Assembly (NCBI GenBank): GCA_965235115.1
Contig: OZ249450.1
Coordinates: 12,834,001-12,898,000 of the forward strand
From: Laetmonice hystrix
Lineage: Eukaryota
Reading direction: 5' to 3'
Length of the DNA: 64,000 nucleotides
Shown here: piece by piece, positions 34,793 to 46,094 of the stretch
How positions within the stretch are numbered: position 1 is the first letter of the stretch
How the letters are laid out: every line of letters begins with the position of its first letter
Notes under the pieces: generated by a model
Database searches by the model: none
What the model saw: the letters and a program-made list of their open reading frames with translations, nothing else
Told to the model about the DNA's origin: nothing
Translations under genes and position numbers: made by a program

Positions 34793-37700
34793 TCACCTGA
34801 ACAGGTGACTGTCGGGGTCAGCCTGGACAATGACAAACTCTTCTCGCATGGTGGTGTTGTTATCATCCCAGCAGCTGCGGCCACACGTGTACACTAACAC
34901 TGTACCAAACTCCACACTTGGATCTGAAGGGACAAAACACGACTATCAGAAGGGAAACCGAACATTTATATATAATTAAAAAAATGTATTACAGAACCAC
35001 TGTATTTAAGGTCATGTGTGGCACCTATCAAATCTCACACCATATCTCGCCATAGTAAGATATATCCAACCCAAACCCATTATGCCAATATAATGCATTT
35101 AAATACAAAGAACAAGTATTTTTGATTTAAAAAATGTAAAAAAGTCACTGTGGTTACCAGGGTTGGAGCTAGCTCAGGAGACCTTTTAGCCAAATTTTAG
35201 CCAAATGTGATTTTGATTCGCCAAATTCCATCACTGTTAGCCAATAAATATGAAGGGTAAAATGAAAACAGGTAAGATCTGCCACGCCGTCACATTAGCT
35301 ACCGGTACTGGCTAGAGCATGCTTGTTACGCAGGCCAGGCGCGTAGCCCGGGGGGGGGGGGGGGGGGGGGTTCAAGGCCGATTGACTGAGGAAAGAAGAG
35401 GGTCTAGGTACTTTAGGAAAGTCTGGGACAAAGATCAGGGCAAGAACTGTCATGTTGCTGTTAGTCGCCCGACAGAGTCGAGTACCACTTGGCTGTTCGC
35501 CAAATTTTTCGCCAAGTGATAAACGCAGTCGCCAGATTGTGCTGTCAGTCGCCATTGGCGATTTGGCGAGCGGGTCGCGCGAACCCTGGGTTACTTTTTT
35601 GTTATATGCCTAGGTTTATGGGAAATAATGCCTTTGCAAAGCCTTGGGTTTACCCTGGTGGCCCCCAGATTAGTGTAAGGTGCACTCAAATTAACAGTAA
35701 CGTGCATTTTCTACAGACATAATATATGGATATTTTTCCCTTTTTAAAAACAGAAACACTTGTTCTTTCTATCAAAATAGATAATATTGATATGTAATGG
35801 GTTTGACTTATTGTACATGCGACAGTGTGGATGTCAACATATATGTGACAAGTGTCATTGGTCAATAACTTTGAGTTGAAATCTTTCTTTTCTTTTTGAG
35901 TTACCTGGAATATTTGGAATTTTCAGTACGCCAACCAGTGAGGGCATCAGTTGTAGTTCGAACACGCGTATTGCGCCACAGTGGGTGCAAGGAGGTGTTA
36001 TTGTTTTTGGCGGTGTGGTCAGGTAGAGTGGTTTACCTCCATACTCGTACCTGGAAATGATGATCCACTGATAGATTTTATTGATGGCAGTTTTACAATG
36101 ATAGATGTTTCATGCAGGCAGTAAAAATATGGACATGAAGTCTACTTGTATGACCGATCCATTATTACATTGAACCACCATACTTGGACTTGTTCAGAAG
36201 GATACAATAGTACCGGTAGTTAGCCAAACCACAGAACATTGGGAGATTTTATCTTGGTAACTTGGAAAAGGAACACCACAACTGACCTTGACTTTACTTC
36301 CTTTTCTTATATAAATTTAATTTTATGTTTTATATTCATTACTTCTTGAGTACAAGGCCAGCTCCTACTTATTGAAGTTGAGTGTATTTCCAAAAGTTTA
36401 ACTCTGTTGTGAATACTTGCCTCAGGATTTGCTGTGGACAACTTGAGATGCGTTTTGTAAACCTCGAGAACGTCTGATCCCCGTGTCGTGCTTGTGATTT
36501 CTCATAACCTTCAGTTCCCCCACTTCCTTTACCTTTACCTGGGCCTTTGAGTGAACTGTAATGAAATTGCCACACTCGCTATTTATACTTCTTAGATGTT
36601 CAAACTATTTTCACATGAATGTGAAAAACGTTTGTTACTTCAGATTTAAGAAGATGACTTCCCTTAGATGAAGTCATCTTTAAAGAAATCTTGATGAAAT
36701 GCAATAATGGAATAATTCAGTGTTTCTAACATGTTACTAACTCCATATATATTTTCAAATGAGCTCGGCCATTTTTGCCTTACGCTGACCACATTGATCC
36801 TTACCTGGTATGAGTAGTGAGCAAAGCCTCCAGGTTTAATCCTTCTTGACGAGAGTAATCGGCCAGAAGATGGCGTTCGTGTTGGAGATCTTGGTGAGCT
36901 GAGTCAGCCGGTTCATCAAACACATTGATGTAATACGACACAAGTTCTTCAACTATAAACAAAAAATGGATTACAATAAAATTACGATACAAGGGAACAT
37001 TATCTAGAAACAATTGCTCTGCGAAGATACCTGATAAAATCAATTAAAATAATTTCACACATGTCAAGGAATACCTCATAAAAAATATGAACTGATTTAA
37101 CTACCCGTAATGGACAATGTTTCTGGTTGATCAGTCCCTGCTTGTTGTTGACCAGGGAGACGTAAGACAGTTTCCATGAGTTGATACGATGGTGTTTCTG
37201 CAACCACCTCTGCGATACACTCAGCATCTGCTGCACAGCTGCTGTCATCAGCAGATCCTGATCCGCTCTGTTCCATTTCTGTCGCCTCCTCACTTGATCC
37301 AAGATCCTCGTTCAAAGTGTACCCTTTTATAGAATCATGTGTTTTCATTTCAGAGTTTCCGTTCTTGCTAATTGTTAATTTGTCGGTAACCATGGAGATA
37401 AGATCACTGTCCTCATCACCGTCTCCACCCCAACTGTCTGCATCATCGCACCAATCTGCTGCCCGAGAACCGTTTCCAGACGACTTGTCTCTGCTCTCGC
37501 CCCAATCACTAAATGCACTGTCGTCGTAAGATCCTCCCCTCGTGTCAGAGTGGTGGTTCTGGTCCAACATCTGAGCTCTCAGAACTTGCCAGCTGTAACA
37601 ATCATCCCCAGTATATGGCATAACGATTTCTCACCTATGTTATACTTCAATGAATTCTTTTATACAATTGTTTGTGATGCATTGTTTTTAAGAGAAGTCT

Positions 37701-38605
37701 TTAAGAAAATGATAACCTTAATTTACGACAGTGAAAGTACATTTTTTATATATGACTTTGTTGGGCTACATGTTCATTACTGTAATGGTAAGGAAATGTC
37801 CATCAGTAAATTTTTTTTTTCATTAATATGTTGGCATTGTTACTTGAGTGTTTGTAAACTTTAGAGAACTGAATTGTAATTTAGTCCCAACTTGCGAATA
37901 TCAAACAAAGTCAGTGCTACCGGAATGTTATATACTGGCTTTGTTCACATTCCAACATTTCAAATTCTATTTTTTTTAAATTCAGATATGCTGTGGCCAA
38001 TGCCAATGGAAAGCATATACCATAGTGTCCAAGATTTTTCTTACTTCAATACTACTTGTACCTATACCATGCATTTTCAATGATCCTCATCATATGTCAT
38101 GCTTACCTCTCTGCTCTATTCCAACATGACTTATGGCAACAAGCAAATATATATAAGGTCCTGTAGTATGAAGATTCTCCCAGAGGAGAGTAGACTTGGG
38201 TGATTAGGCTCAGTGACTGCCCACAGAGTCCACATGTCGGCTGACGAGGGAGCACACCAATCATCCAATCCTGGAAGCCACCAAATAAAAACATATTAGT
38301 AGTGTACAAGGCTGCTTGTCTTTTGAGTCGAATAAGACTGAATAGCCCATCAGTTTTCAATACAACATCTGTTACACTTTATTGCAGTTTCAGTTCTTCA
38401 AACAACAGTTAAGAAATTGTATTACTAATCAATTCTTGTAAAAAAAACAAAACATTTTAATTACTCCATATGATACTAGTTGATAAAATACATGTACTTA
38501 TGTACTAATTTAGCATACAGCTTTTCCTCCTATTTTGTTGGTGCTCCAGTCTGTGGCAGTGCCAGGGTCAACTTGTTCATCACAAAGTCCAAGAAGAACA
38601 GACAT
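34793..38605 (-). CDS. PDCD2L: Programmed cell death 2-like protein (uS5 chaperone family), 432 aa, 7 coding exons
   Basis: Exons 38605-38519, 38270-38107, 37592-37105, 36952-36805, 36555-36421, 36050-35905, 34923-34793 (1299 nt). Motifs: VLLGLCDE..WSTNKIGGKAD, CGLCGQSLSLITQVYSPL, YRTLYIFAC, DWCDDADSWG, YEKSQARHGD, CPQQILRY, CTHCGAIRVFELQLMP, VEFGTVLVYTC. Confidence 0.93.
35158..35588. mobile_element. hAT-like MITE with 6-bp TSD in PDCD2L intron 6
   Basis: CAGGGTT...GAACCCTG flanked on both sides by GGTTAC; subterminal (T)CGCCAA/TAGCCAA repeats. Confidence 0.7.
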
Positions 38606-40354: not shown

Positions 40355-40540
40355 CTTACGTAAGATTAAATTTGTTTAACCCCAAAAGAATAGGGCCTCG
40401 ATGAGATAGCCATGAAATGATTCACGCGGGACGGCGCCAAGCGCCCTCTGTCGAAGAAGGCGATTTTTATGTGTTTTACCTTTTTCACAGTGGCGTCGGG
40501 TTGAGGAGGCACTGGTTGTGGTGTAGTGTAGGGAAGGTAG
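40355..40540. promoter_or_regulatory. Putative bidirectional promoter and non-coding first exons of PDCD2L (-) and the CUB-LDLa gene (+)
   Basis: CpG-rich patch with a minus-strand donor GTAAGT near 40359 and a plus-strand donor AAG/GTAGG near 40536. Both downstream coding starts are preceded by splice acceptors (38620, 41130). Confidence 0.45.
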
Positions 40541-41172
40541 GCCACTGATAACACAATGGTATTGCTTATATTGATGGTTAATTCTTGACAATAAGTATGT
40601 ACCCTGTATAATCCTTAACTCAGGTGGAGCTGACAGAATCCTCGGCTTGGGTGTGCAGCCCAAAGCCAAAGAGAACCGGGCAAAAACAAGGGTCTGTTTT
40701 TACGGTAACGTTACCGTAAATTGCGCAATCCATTTCCATATGATATTGGGATGGTTGTCGCGCTCGGTCATAATAATATTATTCGTAAGAAATTATTAAT
40801 AGCTAATGTTTAGATTAGATACCGTATTTCCTAACCTGAGACTACTTTAAGTTAATGAGATACCGGTAGCTAGATGAATGAAGGAAGAGCTGGACAAAGA
40901 AGGAGGGAAAGCAGGACTTTTGTCCATCATTACTCATTAGCTACCTCTCAGTCTCAGGCATGCAGCATGAGCCATGTGGACCATGCATGTTTCTTCGATA
41001 TGTTGTCAAGTGCTGTACATTTACATCTCTCCCCATGTCACTTGTAGAGGAGATGTTTGTAATCATCTCTTTCCATTCTTCTTATATTTAATTGTGTCAG
41101 GTAGGAAATAATGTGTTTCATCTGTTTTTAGGGCGCAGAGTTTGGTGATGTGAAGATTTGCTGAAGAACATT

Positions 41173-44098
41173 ATGGCTGGGCCAGCACAGTTTGGGGCCA
41201 GGCCATTCATAATATTGTGGCTACCAATACTCTTGGTATCAAGTAAGTTTCTTCCTATTCTTCTTTATGTTTTAATAAGACTAAGGTCAAGTTTTAGGGT
41301 CAAGACTATTGCTAGGTATCCGTGGTCTAAAACTCGCAGCTGACTACTCAAACTCCCATGACCTAGCTTTCATAAATATCCATGAATGCAATGAAAGTCA
41401 GAGATAGGAAAACTTTGGCCTTTGGGATCACTAAAATTTATGCATTGTATAGCATGATTTTGTGCAGAGAAAAGCAGAATGTGCAGCCCACAGCAGGATT
41501 TGTCTATTTATCATAAAAAAAACCCTACTTCTCATTGAAATAGTATCCAGTTAAATACAGACATGTTTTTTACTTCAGAATTGGCTGGGGGACTCACTCA
41601 CCATTTTCTTGATGGAAAACAAGATTATTGCAATGCTGAAGGTGTGAGAAGGATGGTGACAGATTCATTACGTGTTGATCTATCACGGAACCCCTTGATG
41701 TTCAAACAGAAGGACTTTGTCAGATGTACATTAACTCTACAGGCTCCAAAGGGATTCCATCTCATTTTGTCCTGGAGCAATTTCTATATAAGCCAAAAGA
41801 ATTGGTAAGAGAGAAGTTAATGTTCTATAATTTCATTCAAACTCAAAGCAGTATGGAACATGAGCTAACCTTTTCTGTACACGTACACATTGTGACGCAG
41901 TTCTACAAACTTCAAGTTTAAAAAAACCTTTTTTATTATCACTAACAGTAATATTATATGGTAGCTTTATTTAAACCTTATTTTCAGCCAATCGTGTGGT
42001 TATGTAAGGATCTTTGAGAAAAAGCCTCTGGCAGGTTGGTCCGAGAAGTTGTCGGGAATGTGGACCAATGGAGATATTGTGTCGAGTGGGCGCACCCTCC
42101 GTATTTATTACCAAGGCTGGCCTTATTACGATACTATGTCAATGACGGTCACTGCATATAGAGGTGAGCTGTACCATACTTTAGATACCTTAATGATAAA
42201 TGATAATTGAGAATCATAAAAACACTAAAACAGCGATAGAAAGGAAAGGTAGATCTATTCACTTCACAGTCTTTTTGTAAAAATAAGAAAAATAATTTCA
42301 CCCTCTTCATGATACAAAACAACAAAAGCCATTGTGTCTGATTTGTGTCTGTTCTAGACCCATCAAGTGAAGGAACTTGTCAAGAAGATGAATATCTTTG
42401 TCATGGAAAGATGAAGATGTGCATTCCGTTTACTTTGGTGTGCAATGGAGAGAATAACTGTGGTGTTGACAACATCAATGATGAAACCAATGTCTTATGT
42501 CGTAATGAGCAAAGTGAGTCATCCTCCATACAGTAGTAAAAATCTGATTGTTATGGCCATTCTTTACACTCTTCTACCCTGAACATTCTATGACCTGAAC
42601 TGATCTTGCACTGGATGGGGACGTTACGCATCGACTTTCATTTTCTTTGGTACAGATTTGCCTAATTTGAAAAATTATTTTTCCTTCCAATCAGATACCA
42701 TAGAGCCAACCATATGCAGGACGATACCTGTAGGTCTGATAGGTGCTCTGGGTGGTATCCTTATCACAGGCTCCTTCCTAGCAGTCCTTGCAATCACACT
42801 CTGTGTTTTACGCAAAAGAAGGTGAGTTTAAAAGTAATTTATACAAAGAATGATTATTTTGCTATTTTAGTTGTGGTATTTATGAATTATGAATTTCTAT
42901 TCTTAGACATACTGTTACCAGTACTCATTGAGGTAAAGATTGACTTGTCTAGATTTTTTTCACTTATAAATTTGACACCAGCAAATTACCAGCACACGTA
43001 ATTTATAGGCATTGCCAAACTCGTAACATTGAATTGTACAAGGAACAAAAGAATTGCAGAATTCTGTATGGGTCCTGTACCTATTATATACCGGTAAGCC
43101 TCTCAGTGTGTATTACCATTAGGGGCAGAACGTTCGATGTACCGTAGAATTGGTGCATTGTCGATTCAGGGGGCACGATATGAATCGTGATACACAGGCC
43201 TATCATTTTGAAGAAATTGATCAAAATACAGATGTCCGATTAATGATTGTGGTACATGTTTGAGCTCAGGGTTGGGGGCTCATGGGCTACCCTCCTGAAT
43301 TGAGTTTGAGTTCATGTTATTCTTTTTGATAGGGACAGATATAGAGAAGTTATAACATGTTTTTAAAAGACAAAAATGAACAAATGATACTTTCTTTACA
43401 ATGTGTTATAACCTCGTATCGTGACTTCTGTATCACAATATGTATCATATTGCAAGAAAATGTATCGGTTCACCCCTAATTTGTATATCGTTTGATTCTC
43501 CAAAACTCTCAAAGAGAAAGGTCATGCTTTCCTTTGGAGAATCAAAATATGCAGTAATGTTAATATGATGCTTTCCTTCTGTCACATCGCCCCAAACAGG
43601 CAACGTGAGGCAGCTGCGACAGCCCAGAGTGCGTGGGCCAACCCGCAACCCCCAGCCAGTAAGGCAGTCCCAAATGAATACCTCCCCCTCCCTATGCCAC
43701 TGTCGCAAGCGCGTGACCAACAAACGCAGTCCGAGTCGGAACTACTGGTGCCACCCAGTGTTCAGCCTCTTGACACTGGGCAGCCTCCTGTGACTGGCAT
43801 CCGCATTGCGAATTACGACGGAGGGGGTCGCCACCGCCATTTTGTTGACCCCGCGCGAAGTCAGCAACTTCTGACACAGTCTCACAACCGTCAGGTGCTG
43901 CCTGTTCCATTAGAGTCAACTGGGCCTGTGCCGCCAGCCAGACCCGACATAGAATATTCCGAAGGGCCCCTCTATGTCAATATTCCAGGAGGGTCCAGTC
44001 AGGCAAGCAGGGAACATTTTGTGGGTACATCAAGTGAGGAACAGCACTACGTTAATGTACCTCAGAGTGCAGGACAGCATTATGTGAATATTCCATAG
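41173..44098 (+). CDS. Single-pass CUB-like + LDL-receptor class A domain membrane protein, 417 aa, 6 coding exons
   Basis: Exons 41173-41242 (signal peptide), 41579-41804 and 41988-42163 (CUB-like), 42358-42513 (LDLa: CQEDEYLCHGKMKMCIPFTLVCNGENNCGVDNINDETNVLC), 42695-42821 (TM: GLIGALGGILITGSFLAVLAITLCVL-RKRR), 43600-44098 (Pro-rich tail). Total 1254 nt, phases consistent. Confidence 0.88.
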
Positions 44099-46094
44099 GA
44101 TGATTGGAACTTGGACAATATGGTCCAAGATCTGAACAAGGTTGTGAACTCCCGAGAATAATGTAGCATATTGTGCTGTTCAAAGTTGTGAATGGTGTAT
44201 ATCAAGGTGAAGTGAAGCACAGTGCCACCTACTGTGTCGAAAAGTAGCATGAAGTAGTGCTTGAATGTGTTTCAGAATTTTAAAATGAGAAAGTTCAATT
44301 TGCAGACAAGTTGAATGAGACTTGTGTGATTTGACTGAGGTTGTCTTGCGTGAACCTCAGGTATATTCATAACGACCTACACATCTGTTATAACATCACA
44401 CATTCCCTTATCAACTTCATGGTGTTAACAAATAAGGGACAGGAAGTCCCTCTAAGACTAAGGCTTCTAACTTATAGATGTTCATTAATTTCGTTCGAGC
44501 TCATATGTATGCCTCCTTTTATTATTATTTTTTTTAAATTTGATTTTACTCTGTTATATCAAGCAAGTGGGAAACTGTTCAAATGTGTTTGTTGAATCAG
44601 CAATACAAACACAATACGTGATTTGCTTTTTGTGCATGTTAGAAATATTTATCAAATAGGGAACTTCAACAGTCTACTGACTTCTACGTTGTTCGAAGGT
44701 GTCGCTTTGAAAAGAGTTTTAAGAGGCATGTAACTCCAGTACGGTGAGTGATTTCATTGTTTTTGTTTGTGCGGGTAGCACAGGACTGAAAATTATGTCA
44801 TAATTAATATGGTTGGTGCAAAAGCTTTAAAAATGTGCTTGTGTTAAGAGAATAATTGGTAATATCATGAACTCAAGATACTGATAGTTTGTTAAGGACA
44901 CCTATTTATTTCTGTCGTTGGATCTGCCTCGCTAAATGTGCGTTGTGTTTGCAAACCTTCAGCATGAGATGCTGAGAGAGAAGAGAATCGGAGGATATAA
45001 GTTACTTGAGGTGGGTTGTAGAGCAGAGTTTATGCATGAAACCTTTTATTAACATTTCATGTTTCATTGAAAACTGTCCTCCAGAAGCTGCTCTACATGG
45101 TTTGGACCATGATTTGTTATTGGCTGGGGGCCTCGTATGATACACACAGGGTTATTAATATAAAAATAATTGGCCAATTATGATGCTACAAATGTTATAT
45201 TGGCTTTAACTGAAGTTGTCTCTAATCATGAAAATCAAATCTTTAGTCATGTACCGGTAATAACATTGGCGTACCAAAGGGAGATGACCTTTTTGGTATG
45301 CTTTGATTGCAGTTTGATTTGTTATTGTTGACAGTTATATTGTCTTTTTGAATAAACGTTTATTTTTTCTAAAATTAGTTTTTGATTTAGATAATATTAT
45401 CATCATGGTCGTTCCTGTTTTAAACACCATGATATGTGATGCTGAAAAAAACGTAGTGCTTTTCAGCCCTCTCCGAAATAATAAAAAGTTTAAACTTATA
45501 AAGGTGCAGTATGATCATAGAGTTGTTTTCTTAGAATCATTCTTTAGTTACTCTTATGCATGTTATACATGTAATGGATTATCGTATGTAAATCGTTAAA
45601 TTTCGTTGACTGTCTATGCTTTATTGGTACATTGTACTAGGTGGATGAACGACTGACTTGAATATACATGTTTTTTGATGTCTCGTAAAAGTGGGACAGA
45701 CAAACACTCGTACATAGAAATATGAAACATTTATTTCGTTCTAATAATACCCAATCATTCCTTTGTTATGTATGTCTGATCGAGAATGGGCCTATTAAAT
45801 AGGGGACCAGAGAAATAGTACGCCCTGTGCAGTTTACCACTGTTTTTGTTCAATACGAATGGAAGTACATGCGCATATCTGTATTATTAGAATTAAACCA
45901 GCACCCTCTTGTATAACACAGTCATTTAAACATCAATTTTCTAACATCTGGCATACGTACTATATAGGGCATCAAAAGGTATGAATACTTCATATATTTT
46001 CCCAGCATAAGTTAGAACTATATAAGTTAAACGGGTAATGATAGCGGTTACACACATAACGAAGTAGACAATATTTCCTCGAGGCGGTGTCTAT

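What the first reader, a model, noticed from the sequence alone, without database searches (positions are those of the whole stretch)
43600..44098. CUB-LDLa receptor with a LAT-like tail: three C-terminal YVN(I/V)P motifs plus a PxxPxR motif
Seen: the tail ends ...PVPPARPDIEYSEGPLYVNIP...QHYVNVP...QHYVNIP-stop, with further tyrosines (NEYLP, ANYDG). Known: pY-x-N (pYVNV) is the canonical Grb2-family SH2 ligand, found as a cluster of three distal YxN sites in LAT. PxxPxR is a class II SH3 ligand. Characterised CUB-LDLa proteins (Neto, LEV-10, Culd) act mainly as auxiliary or trafficking subunits. Inference: a kinase-less receptor or adaptor that could nucleate multivalent Grb2-SOS signalling assemblies in an invertebrate.
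Basis: partly seen in the sequence, partly recalled or inferred. Interest (0 to 1): 0.7.

Follow-up and report, generated by a model that had tools for sequence, protein, structure and literature searches.

The report
CUB-LDLa membrane protein, triple YVN tail
This is a real, expressed, single-copy invertebrate gene for a small membrane protein (CUB and LDLa domains outside, disordered tail inside) whose tail ends in three near-identical tyrosine motifs of the kind that recruit the Ras-pathway adaptor Grb2, but that function is so far only inferred from sequence.

Summary
Window 43600-44098 is the coding part of the last exon of a gene with six coding exons. It encodes a 417-residue type I membrane protein: signal peptide, one divergent CUB, one LDLa, one TM helix and a 165-residue tail. 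A spliced cDNA contig joins every exon exactly as read from the sequence, including the TM exon to the tail exon.

The tail carries YVNIP, YVNVP and YVNIP-stop, plus PVPPAR. About 0.0003 such motifs are expected by composition. The copies differ mainly at synonymous codon positions, so the peptide motif is being maintained.

The only relative found among 1.84 billion representative proteins is an 81-residue fragment. It keeps PVPPPR and two of the three sites (YINV, YVNV). The middle site has lost both Y and N (FVDVP).

The conserved core Y-[VI]-N-[VI] is the Grb2 SH2 footprint, and YVNVP is identical to human LAT Y171. The genome encodes a Grb2/Drk orthologue.

My best reading (about 0.45) is a kinase-less phosphotyrosine docking receptor. 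The same motifs also fit YxxΦ sorting signals (about 0.3), which would match the endosomal roles of CULD and Loaf. Nothing here shows phosphorylation or binding. The gene has no paralogue and appears lineage-restricted. Earlier scan notes only repeat this same stretch.

The parts
40505..40534 (+). 3' end of a non-coding 5' UTR exon; the transcription start lies at or upstream of 40505
   Evidence: The 30 letters that precede 41130 in the cDNA contig (table 7) match the window only here.
41130..41242 (+). Exon 1: 5' UTR, ATG at 41173 and signal peptide (aa 1-23 plus one base)
   Evidence: Joint 41242->41579 with GT..AG. An in-frame stop at 41146-48 lies upstream of the ATG. A hydrophobic h-region is present.
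41579..41804 (+). Exon 2: N-terminal half of the divergent CUB domain
   Evidence: Joints. ESM Atlas features point to CUB clusters at 0.93-0.94. Part of the home-made CUB profile match.
41988..42163 (+). Exon 3: C-terminal half of the CUB domain
   Evidence: Joints. The CUB profile match spans aa 70-140 at E 2.5e-5 and beats 2000 of 2000 shuffles.
42358..42513 (+). Exon 4: LDL-receptor class A module with six Cys; several calcium-binding Asp positions are replaced by Asn
   Evidence: Pfam PF00057, E 2.4e-6, 28.1 bits against a cut-off of 24.1. Joints.
42695..42821 (+). Exon 5: stalk, transmembrane helix (about aa 221-246) and basic stop-transfer RKRR; Cys246 sits at the cytosolic end of the helix
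   Evidence: Hydropathy maximum of 2.46 at aa 230-248. Joint 42821->43600.
43600..44098 (+). Exon 6, coding part: 165-residue cytoplasmic tail rich in Pro, Gln and Ser, predicted disordered; stop at 44096-98
   Evidence: Single-sequence AlphaFold2 gives mean pLDDT 47 and almost no secondary structure.
43679..43690 (+). Y279 YLPL: membrane-proximal YxxΦ candidate
   Evidence: Motif scan.
43925..43942 (+). PVPPAR (aa 361-366): class II PxxPxR candidate SH3 ligand, 11 residues upstream of the first YVN site
   Evidence: Conserved as PVPPPR inside the best-conserved block of the relative P0001.
43973..43987 (+). Site 1: Y377 YVNIP
   Evidence: Conserved as YINVS in P0001.
44048..44062 (+). Site 2: Y402 YVNVP, the same pentapeptide as human LAT Y171
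   Evidence: LAT sequence in PMC6624021. Replaced by FVDVP in P0001.
44081..44095 (+). Site 3: Y413 YVNIP, the C-terminus of the protein
   Evidence: Conserved as YVNVA in P0001.
44099..45417 (+). 3' UTR, about 1.3 kb; the end is approximate and AATAAA lies at 45351-56
   Evidence: The cDNA contig covers 43598-45200 and has 217 further letters beyond. Sequence.

Best explanation
The gene encodes a kinase-less, receptor-type transmembrane docking protein.

Shown here: it is a single-copy, transcribed gene with six coding exons. The protein has a signal peptide, one divergent CUB, one LDLa, one TM helix and a disordered 165-residue tail. The distal 57 residues of the tail hold a class II SH3 ligand (PVPPAR) followed by three Y-V-N-[IV] sites.

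Inferred mechanism:
1. Ligand binding or clustering through the CUB-LDLa ectodomain, or association with a partner receptor, brings a cytoplasmic tyrosine kinase to the tail. A Src-family kinase docking its SH3 on PVPPAR is one possibility.
2. Y377, Y402 and Y413 are phosphorylated.
3. Each pY-V-N-[IV] site binds the SH2 domain of the animal's Grb2/Drk orthologue, whose SH3 domains bring SOS and so activate Ras-MAPK.
4. With up to three sites per tail the assembly could be multivalent, as in LAT.
5. When unphosphorylated, the same YxxΦ-type motifs may bind AP-2. That would give a CTLA-4-like switch between internalisation and signalling.
For: - The gene model and the TM-to-tail splice are confirmed by a cDNA contig. 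The gene is single-copy.
- The motif cluster is far beyond chance: 3e-4 expected, and no shuffle in 1e5 had two or more. It is kept at the peptide level while synonymous sites differ, with four synonymous differences in seven codons between sites 2 and 3.
- In the only relative (P0001; library E 1e-7, pairwise E 1e-16), identity is concentrated in PLxSTGPVPPxRxDI and in sites 1 and 3. Y, [VI], N and [VI] are kept, while Pro at +4 and the flanks change. The spacer has an 8-residue gap.
- All five Tyr-bearing copies in the two species have Asn at +2. At the one lost site, Y and N changed together (FVDVP).
- The conserved core equals the Grb2 SH2 footprint pY-[EVQK]-N-[VIL], with Asn essential at +2 (PMC3694890).
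- YVNVP is identical to LAT Y171. Other listed Grb2 ligands also have Pro at +4, namely LAX1 yENVPA and GSTP1 yVNLPI.
- The genome encodes a Grb2/Drk orthologue with N-SH3 exons and an SH2 carrying KYFLWVVKF.
- The tail is predicted disordered, as docking tails are.
- Vertebrate CUB-bearing scaffold receptors DCBLD1/2 use multi-site Tyr phosphorylation by Fyn and Abl to recruit an SH2 adaptor (PMC6029619).
Against: - There is no experimental or phosphoproteomic evidence, and short linear motifs often give false positives.
- Every YVN[IV] site is also a YxxΦ sorting motif. The characterised single-CUB, single-LDLa proteins CULD and Loaf act in endosomal trafficking.
- Conservation rests on one 81-residue fragment of unknown organism. 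Its upstream exons could not be read, and it keeps only two of the three sites.
- The residues upstream of the tyrosines are not strongly acidic, so kinase preference is unclear.
- The complex prediction gave no answer and counts neither way.
Confidence: 0.45

Rival explanations
1. The tyrosine motifs are YxxΦ sorting signals read by clathrin-adaptor mu subunits (AP-2, AP-1 or AP-3). On this reading the protein is an endocytic or endosomal trafficking or auxiliary subunit for some cargo, like CULD, Loaf or Neto, with no SH2 signalling role.
For: YVNI, YVNV, YVNI and YLPL (Y279) all fit Y-x-x-[LIMFV]. [quoted passage not shown] Loaf has the same architecture at 378 aa and is proposed to control trafficking of surface molecules (PMC8205486). 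The +3 hydrophobic residue is kept in every copy, including the Tyr-less FVDVP of the relative.
Against: YxxΦ recognition places no requirement on +2, yet Asn at +2 is invariant in all five Tyr-bearing copies across the two species. It changes only where Tyr is lost. Three tandem copies far from the membrane, next to a conserved PxxPxR, are more typical of docking tails than of sorting signals. The two functions are also not mutually exclusive.
Confidence: 0.3
2. Sites 2 and 3 together form an ITAM-like module (ExxY-x-x-V-x7-Y-x-x-I). When doubly phosphorylated it would recruit a tandem-SH2 Syk/Shark-type kinase, as in Draper or vertebrate immunoreceptors.
For: Y402VNV-x7-Y413VNI fits a relaxed Yxx[LIV]-x6-8-Yxx[LIV] pattern, with Glu at -3 and -4 of the first Tyr.
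Against: The first half-site has Val where the canonical ITAM has Leu or Ile. In the relative the first Tyr is Phe (FVDVP), so the pair is not conserved. The ITAM reading does not explain site 1 or the invariant Asn.
Confidence: 0.07
3. The motifs serve an unknown, lineage-specific partner or have little function. The repeat would then reflect an internal duplication of a short tail segment kept for reasons unrelated to phosphotyrosine signalling or sorting.
For: The tail has no detectable relatives beyond one fragment in 1.84e9 representatives. No Pfam family matches, no paralogue exists, and no named orthologue could be assigned.
Against: Synonymous divergence with amino-acid conservation between the copies, and conservation of two sites in a relative only about 45% identical, argue for selection on the motif. 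The exact match to a very well-characterised ligand class makes an unrelated function less economical.
Confidence: 0.15

Closest known systems
Drosophila CULD (CG17352) and Loaf (CG6024): single-CUB, single-LDLa type I membrane proteins of the Neto-related CUB/LDLa family
   Same: The domain order is the same: signal peptide, one CUB, one LDLa, one TM and a cytoplasmic tail. The size is similar (Loaf 378 aa, this protein 417 aa). None has an enzymatic domain.
   Different: Orthology could not be tested because the spliced protein has no reference for the search tools. The tail is about 165 residues, against about 87 in Loaf, and carries three YVN[IV] sites plus PxxPxR. The papers read here describe no such docking cluster for CULD or Loaf, whose reported roles are endosomal trafficking and axon targeting.
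LAT and other transmembrane adaptor proteins of vertebrate lymphocytes (LAT, NTAL/LAT2, LAX1)
   Same: All are kinase-less membrane proteins with a disordered tail carrying a distal cluster of three pY-x-N Grb2-family sites. Site 2 (YVNVP) is identical to LAT Y171. A Cys sits at the cytosolic end of the TM helix, where LAT is palmitoylated (the LAT fact is from my own knowledge).
   Different: There is no sequence homology: the library-wide search found nothing. LAT has almost no ectodomain, whereas this protein has about 200 extracellular residues with CUB and LDLa. It has no PLC-gamma-type site. The likeness is convergent, not membership.
DCBLD1/DCBLD2 (ESDN) and CDCP1: CUB-containing scaffold receptors
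   Same: All are type I proteins with CUB ectodomains and no kinase domain. The DCBLD tail is phosphorylated at multiple sites by Fyn and Abl and recruits an SH2 adaptor, CRKL (PMC6029619).
   Different: The DCBLD motifs are YxxP, for Crk-family SH2. Here Pro is at +4 and there is no YxxP. The ectodomain composition differs (CUB-LCCL-discoidin against CUB-LDLa). No homology was detected.
Neto1/2, SOL-2 and LEV-10: CUB-LDLa auxiliary subunits of ionotropic receptors
   Same: CUB plus LDLa plus TM plus a long cytoplasmic tail.
   Different: Those proteins have two or more CUB domains, and this one has a single CUB. Whether this protein acts as a channel auxiliary subunit was not tested.

Membership tests
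CUB/LDLa-domain transmembrane proteins (Neto/CULD/Loaf class) | LDL-receptor class A module | tested here: met
   Pfam PF00057, 28.1 bits against a cut-off of 24.1, E 2.4e-6, on exon 4. Six Cys are present.
CUB/LDLa-domain transmembrane proteins (Neto/CULD/Loaf class) | CUB domain N-terminal to the LDLa | tested here: met
   Pfam misses the two half-domain exons, and the whole-genome PF00431 scan does not list this locus. A profile built from 18 CUB exons of the same genome matches aa 70-140 of the spliced protein at E 2.5e-5 and beats 2000 of 2000 shuffles. ESM Atlas features of exon 2 place it at 0.93-0.94 to CUB clusters, with 59 of 100 hits in that set. The domain is divergent, and the usual second disulfide position is not kept.
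CUB/LDLa-domain transmembrane proteins (Neto/CULD/Loaf class) | Signal peptide and single TM helix (type I topology) | tested here: met
   An N-terminal hydrophobic stretch follows the first ATG. There is a single hydropathy peak at aa 221-246, followed by RKRR.
CUB/LDLa-domain transmembrane proteins (Neto/CULD/Loaf class) | Orthology to a named member (Loaf, CULD, Neto, LDLRAD2) | not testable with these tools
   The spliced 417-aa protein has no reference. Searches with single exons were blank.
LAT-type transmembrane adaptors | Cluster of three or more pY-x-N Grb2-family sites in a disordered tail | tested here: met
   Y377, Y402 and Y413 are all Y-V-N-[IV]. The tail has pLDDT 47. Whether the sites are phosphorylated was not tested.
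LAT-type transmembrane adaptors | Minimal ectodomain and sequence homology to LAT, NTAL or LAX | tested here: not met
   The ectodomain has about 200 residues with CUB and LDLa. No homologue of the tail other than P0001 was found in 1.84e9 representatives.
Grb2-family SH2 ligands (functional class) | pY-[EVQK]-N-[VIL] core with Asn at +2 | tested here: met
   Three of three sites fit, and two are conserved in the relative.
Grb2-family SH2 ligands (functional class) | Tyrosine actually phosphorylated and bound by Grb2/Drk SH2 | not testable with these tools
   The complex prediction of the split SH2 with the unphosphorylated tail gave 'no answer'. No proteomic data are available.
DCBLD-type CUB scaffold receptors | Multiple YxxP motifs for Crk/CrkL SH2 | tested here: not met
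   The tail has no YxxP. Pro is at +4.
ITAM-bearing receptors | Yxx[LI]-x6-8-Yxx[LI], conserved as a pair | tested here: not met
   Only the relaxed form with Val is present. The first Tyr is Phe in the relative.
YxxΦ-sorted membrane proteins | Y-x-x-bulky hydrophobic in the cytosolic tail | tested here: inconclusive
   Four matches. The pattern is too loose to discriminate, and binding to mu subunits was not tested.

The most novel reading that the evidence does not exclude
A spiralian (probably annelid) analogue of LAT that arose by convergence. A CUB-LDLa ectodomain senses an extracellular ligand or partner receptor. The kinase-less tail then uses one SH3 ligand and three pYVN sites to nucleate multivalent Grb2/Drk-SOS assemblies at the membrane. 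This would be a receptor-type adaptor class not described in invertebrates, with the same motifs doubling as AP-2 signals when unphosphorylated.
Probability: 0.15. Interest if true: 0.75.

Novelty: new variant of a known kind. Interest (0 to 1): 0.4.

Why it matters
Transmembrane adaptors that gather Grb2-SOS through clustered pYxN sites are known mainly from vertebrate lymphocytes. Characterised CUB-LDLa membrane proteins are trafficking or auxiliary subunits. If this tail really docks Grb2/Drk, it would link the CUB-LDLa receptor class to Ras-MAPK signalling. It would also give an invertebrate, convergently evolved case for testing ideas about valency-driven signalling assemblies. If the motifs are instead sorting signals, the gene is an ordinary, lineage-restricted member of the CULD/Loaf class. 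Either way the gene model is now solid, and the hypothesis can be tested with a few peptides and point mutants.

Tried and rejected
- **Half-domain searches.** Pfam and PDB sequence searches with single CUB half-domain exons found nothing useful.
- **Homologue searches.** The search for homologous proteins was run three times, with the tail, with a tail+P0001 profile and with exon 2. It found nothing except P0001 itself. Its length window excludes full-length proteins of about 400 aa.
- **Representative library.** The search of 1.84e9 representatives with the tail gave one true relative (P0001) and one spurious bacterial repeat protein.
- **DNA around P0001.** It could not be fetched because the sample file is too large. 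Whether P0001 sits behind CUB, LDLa and TM exons is therefore unknown.
- **Metagenome scan.** The scan with the conserved tail peptides found nothing.
- **ESM Atlas with the tail.** No usable hit.
- **Other genes with paired YVN[IV]P.** I searched the whole genome for other in-frame pairs of the motif. The only in-frame hits were two minisatellites. One is at C5:5509757-5511177, with mixed 41/42-nt units and no open reading frame on the motif strand. The other is at C2:3870327-3870817, with 42-nt units open in several frames on both strands. Neither looks coding. I rejected the idea of a gene family sharing this motif.
- **Complex prediction.** I ran the animal's Grb2/Drk SH2, given as its two exon halves, with the last 54 tail residues. 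The tool's verdict was 'no answer'. This is not evidence either way: the domain was split, the peptide was unphosphorylated and the chains were disordered.
- Folding or fold-searching the whole ectodomain, and searching with the full spliced protein, were not done. The spliced sequence has no reference and long sequences must not be typed.
- **Upstream minus-strand neighbour.** I guessed it to be PDCD2-like, but Pfam gave no hit.
Full report
**Observation**

The stretch 43600-44098 is open in one frame and ends at TAG 44096-98. NEYLP (Y279) and ANYDG (Y324) come first, then PVPPAR followed by DIEYSEGPLYVNIP, then QHYVNVP, then QHYVNIP and the stop. The three motifs lie at 43973-87, 44048-62 and 44081-95, and PVPPAR lies at 43925-42.

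**Gene model**

Reading the upstream sequence gave a model of six coding exons with consistent intron phases:
- Exon 1, 41130-41242. The ATG is at 41173, with an in-frame stop at 41146-48 upstream of it.
- Exon 2, 41579-41804.
- Exon 3, 41988-42163.
- Exon 4, 42358-42513.
- Exon 5, 42695-42821.
- Exon 6, from 43600.

Laying public runs on 40800-45200 showed that three runs of the same sample are genomic, with contigs running through the introns. Run X4 holds one 2,642-nt contig that skips exactly these five introns, all GT..AG. That contig carries 30 further 5' letters, which map to 40505-40534 as a non-coding leader exon. It also has about 1.3 kb of 3' UTR.

Each exon occurs only once in the 627-Mb assembly, so the spliced form is cDNA and not a processed copy. 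The refutation condition 'last exon not spliced to the TM exon' is therefore excluded.

**The protein**

The protein has 417 residues, arranged as follows:
- A hydrophobic signal peptide.
- A divergent CUB domain, encoded by exons 2 and 3.
- An LDLa module in exon 4. It scores 28.1 bits in Pfam against a cut-off of 24.1, with E 2.4e-6.
- A single TM helix at about aa 221-246, ending in Cys246 and followed by RKRR.
- A 165-residue tail rich in Pro, Gln and Ser.

Pfam does not see the CUB in either exon alone. A whole-genome CUB scan does not list this locus among its 149 matches. I therefore built a profile from 18 CUB exons of the same genome and searched the spliced ectodomain with it. It aligns over the CUB core (aa 70-140) at E 2.5e-5 for a single sequence and scores above all 2000 shuffles. 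Independently, language-model features of exon 2 land on CUB clusters at 0.93-0.94.

The tail has no Pfam family. A single-sequence AlphaFold2 model predicts it to be disordered, with mean pLDDT 47.

**Chance and selection**

Given the tail's composition, 3e-4 matches to YVN[IV]P are expected. None of 100,000 shuffles had two or more.

Sites 2 and 3 share QHYVN[VI]P but are encoded differently: CAG CAC TAC GTT AAT GTA CCT against CAG CAT TAT GTG AAT ATT CCA. That is four synonymous differences and one V/I replacement. The repeat is therefore old and is kept at the peptide level.

Among the allelic differences seen in the runs, five coding changes are synonymous. Two are replacements, P269H and A289P, both in the membrane-proximal tail. 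None falls in the motif cluster, but the numbers are too small to be significant.

**Relatives**

- A full HMMER pass over 1.84 billion representative proteins with the tail found one true relative, P0001 (E 1e-7). P0001 is an 81-residue ORF fragment on a 678-kb contig of ENA analysis ERZ26222911.
- Pairwise, P0001 is 45% identical to the tail over 64 residues (E 1e-16).
- The alignment shows islands of identity:
  - PLxSTGPVPPxRxDI, so PVPPAR corresponds to PVPPPR.
  - Site 1, YVNIP against YINVS.
  - Site 3, YVNIP against YVNVA.
- The spacer between the islands is diverged and has an 8-residue gap.
- Site 2 is FVDVP in the relative, with Tyr and Asn both gone. Y371 is Ser.
- The conserved core is therefore Y-[VI]-N-[VI], and Pro at +4 is not conserved.
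- I could not retrieve the relative's DNA. No further relatives turned up, and there is no paralogue in this genome.
- Earlier notes of this scan call the genome annelid-like. I did not test that.

**Mechanism**

The conserved four-residue core is the footprint of Grb2-family SH2 domains. Their consensus is pY-[E/V/Q/K]-N-[V/I/L], with Asn at +2 essential (PMC3694890). Site 2 is the same pentapeptide as human LAT Y171 (DYVNVPES), one of the three LAT tyrosines that Grb2 recognises (PMC6624021). Other listed Grb2 ligands also have Pro at +4.

The genome encodes a Grb2/Drk orthologue. Its N-SH3 exons and an SH2 that keeps the KYFLWVVKF segment, including the specificity Trp, lie on contig C1 near 32.636 Mb.

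PVPPAR fits class II PxxPxR and sits 11 residues before site 1. In that position it could recruit an SH3-bearing kinase or adaptor.

My preferred model is therefore a kinase-less docking receptor whose phosphorylated tail recruits Grb2/Drk-SOS. Everything beyond the sequence match is inference.

**Rivals**

- **Sorting signals (confidence 0.3).** All three sites and Y279 (YLPL) fit YxxΦ sorting signals. The two characterised proteins with this exact architecture act in endocytic or endosomal trafficking: CULD (PMC4732287) and Loaf (PMC8205486). What favours SH2 docking over pure sorting is the invariance of Asn at +2 in all five Tyr-bearing copies, and its loss only where Tyr is lost. That rests on two species. 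A dual use is possible, with AP-2 binding when unphosphorylated and SH2 binding when phosphorylated.
- **ITAM-like module (confidence 0.07).** Sites 2 and 3 also fit a relaxed ITAM spacing, but the pair is not conserved.
- **Unknown or no function (confidence 0.15).** This cannot be excluded.

**Comparison with known systems**

By architecture the protein belongs to the CUB/LDLa transmembrane class, closest to CULD and Loaf. Orthology could not be tested.

By tail logic it works like LAT-type adaptors and like the CUB-bearing scaffold receptors DCBLD1/2 (PMC6029619). It is not a member of either. It shows no homology to them, it has a large ectodomain, and it has no YxxP motifs.

I rate it a new variant of a known kind. 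It is a solid gene with a striking, partly conserved motif cluster, but its function is unproven.

**Limits**

The spliced protein has no reference, so it could not be given to the homology, folding or fold-search tools. The complex prediction returned no answer and is not used as evidence.

Noticed in passing
G000:C5:5509757-5511177 (L078:4742-6209): A minisatellite of about 35 units of 41/42 nt. In one minus-strand frame its unit would read YVNIPPPVHEQPIQ. The mixed unit length breaks the frame, and no ORF of 60 aa or more is listed on that strand, so it is probably non-coding. It was found only because it matches the YVNIP pattern.
   Followed up: partly
G000:C2:3870327-3870817 (L062:1479-2054): A 42-nt minisatellite that is open in several frames on both strands. 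One frame reads ...SCYVNVPYTVFTLI... repeatedly. It looks like a satellite rather than a gene.
   Followed up: partly
G000:C3:44786399-44786716: A 19-nt satellite (TACGTGAATGTTCCTGCAG) with many copies. Its period is not a multiple of three.
   Followed up: no
window 37097-38360, minus strand: Two long minus-strand ORFs lie upstream of the CUB-LDLa gene. One has a CGLCG...QVYSPL...IFACC segment and the other is acidic and Ser-rich. Together they look like exons of a neighbouring gene transcribed divergently. From memory they resemble PDCD2-like proteins, but Pfam gave no hit.
   Followed up: partly
window 43299-43445 (intron 5): A short stretch of intron 5 has 3- to 8-fold higher contig depth in all runs, with many loose ends. 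This indicates a dispersed repeat or transposon fragment inside the intron.
   Followed up: no
G000:C1:32635256-32638399 (L053), minus strand: This is the Grb2/Drk orthologue of the animal. The N-SH3 exons and both SH2 exons can be read, and the SH2 C-terminal half is very close to human GRB2.
   Followed up: partly
G000:C21:12600677-12633501: A dense run of several dozen CUB half-domain exons within about 33 kb. It is likely one giant multi-CUB gene, of cubilin or CSMD type, or a tandem array.
   Followed up: no
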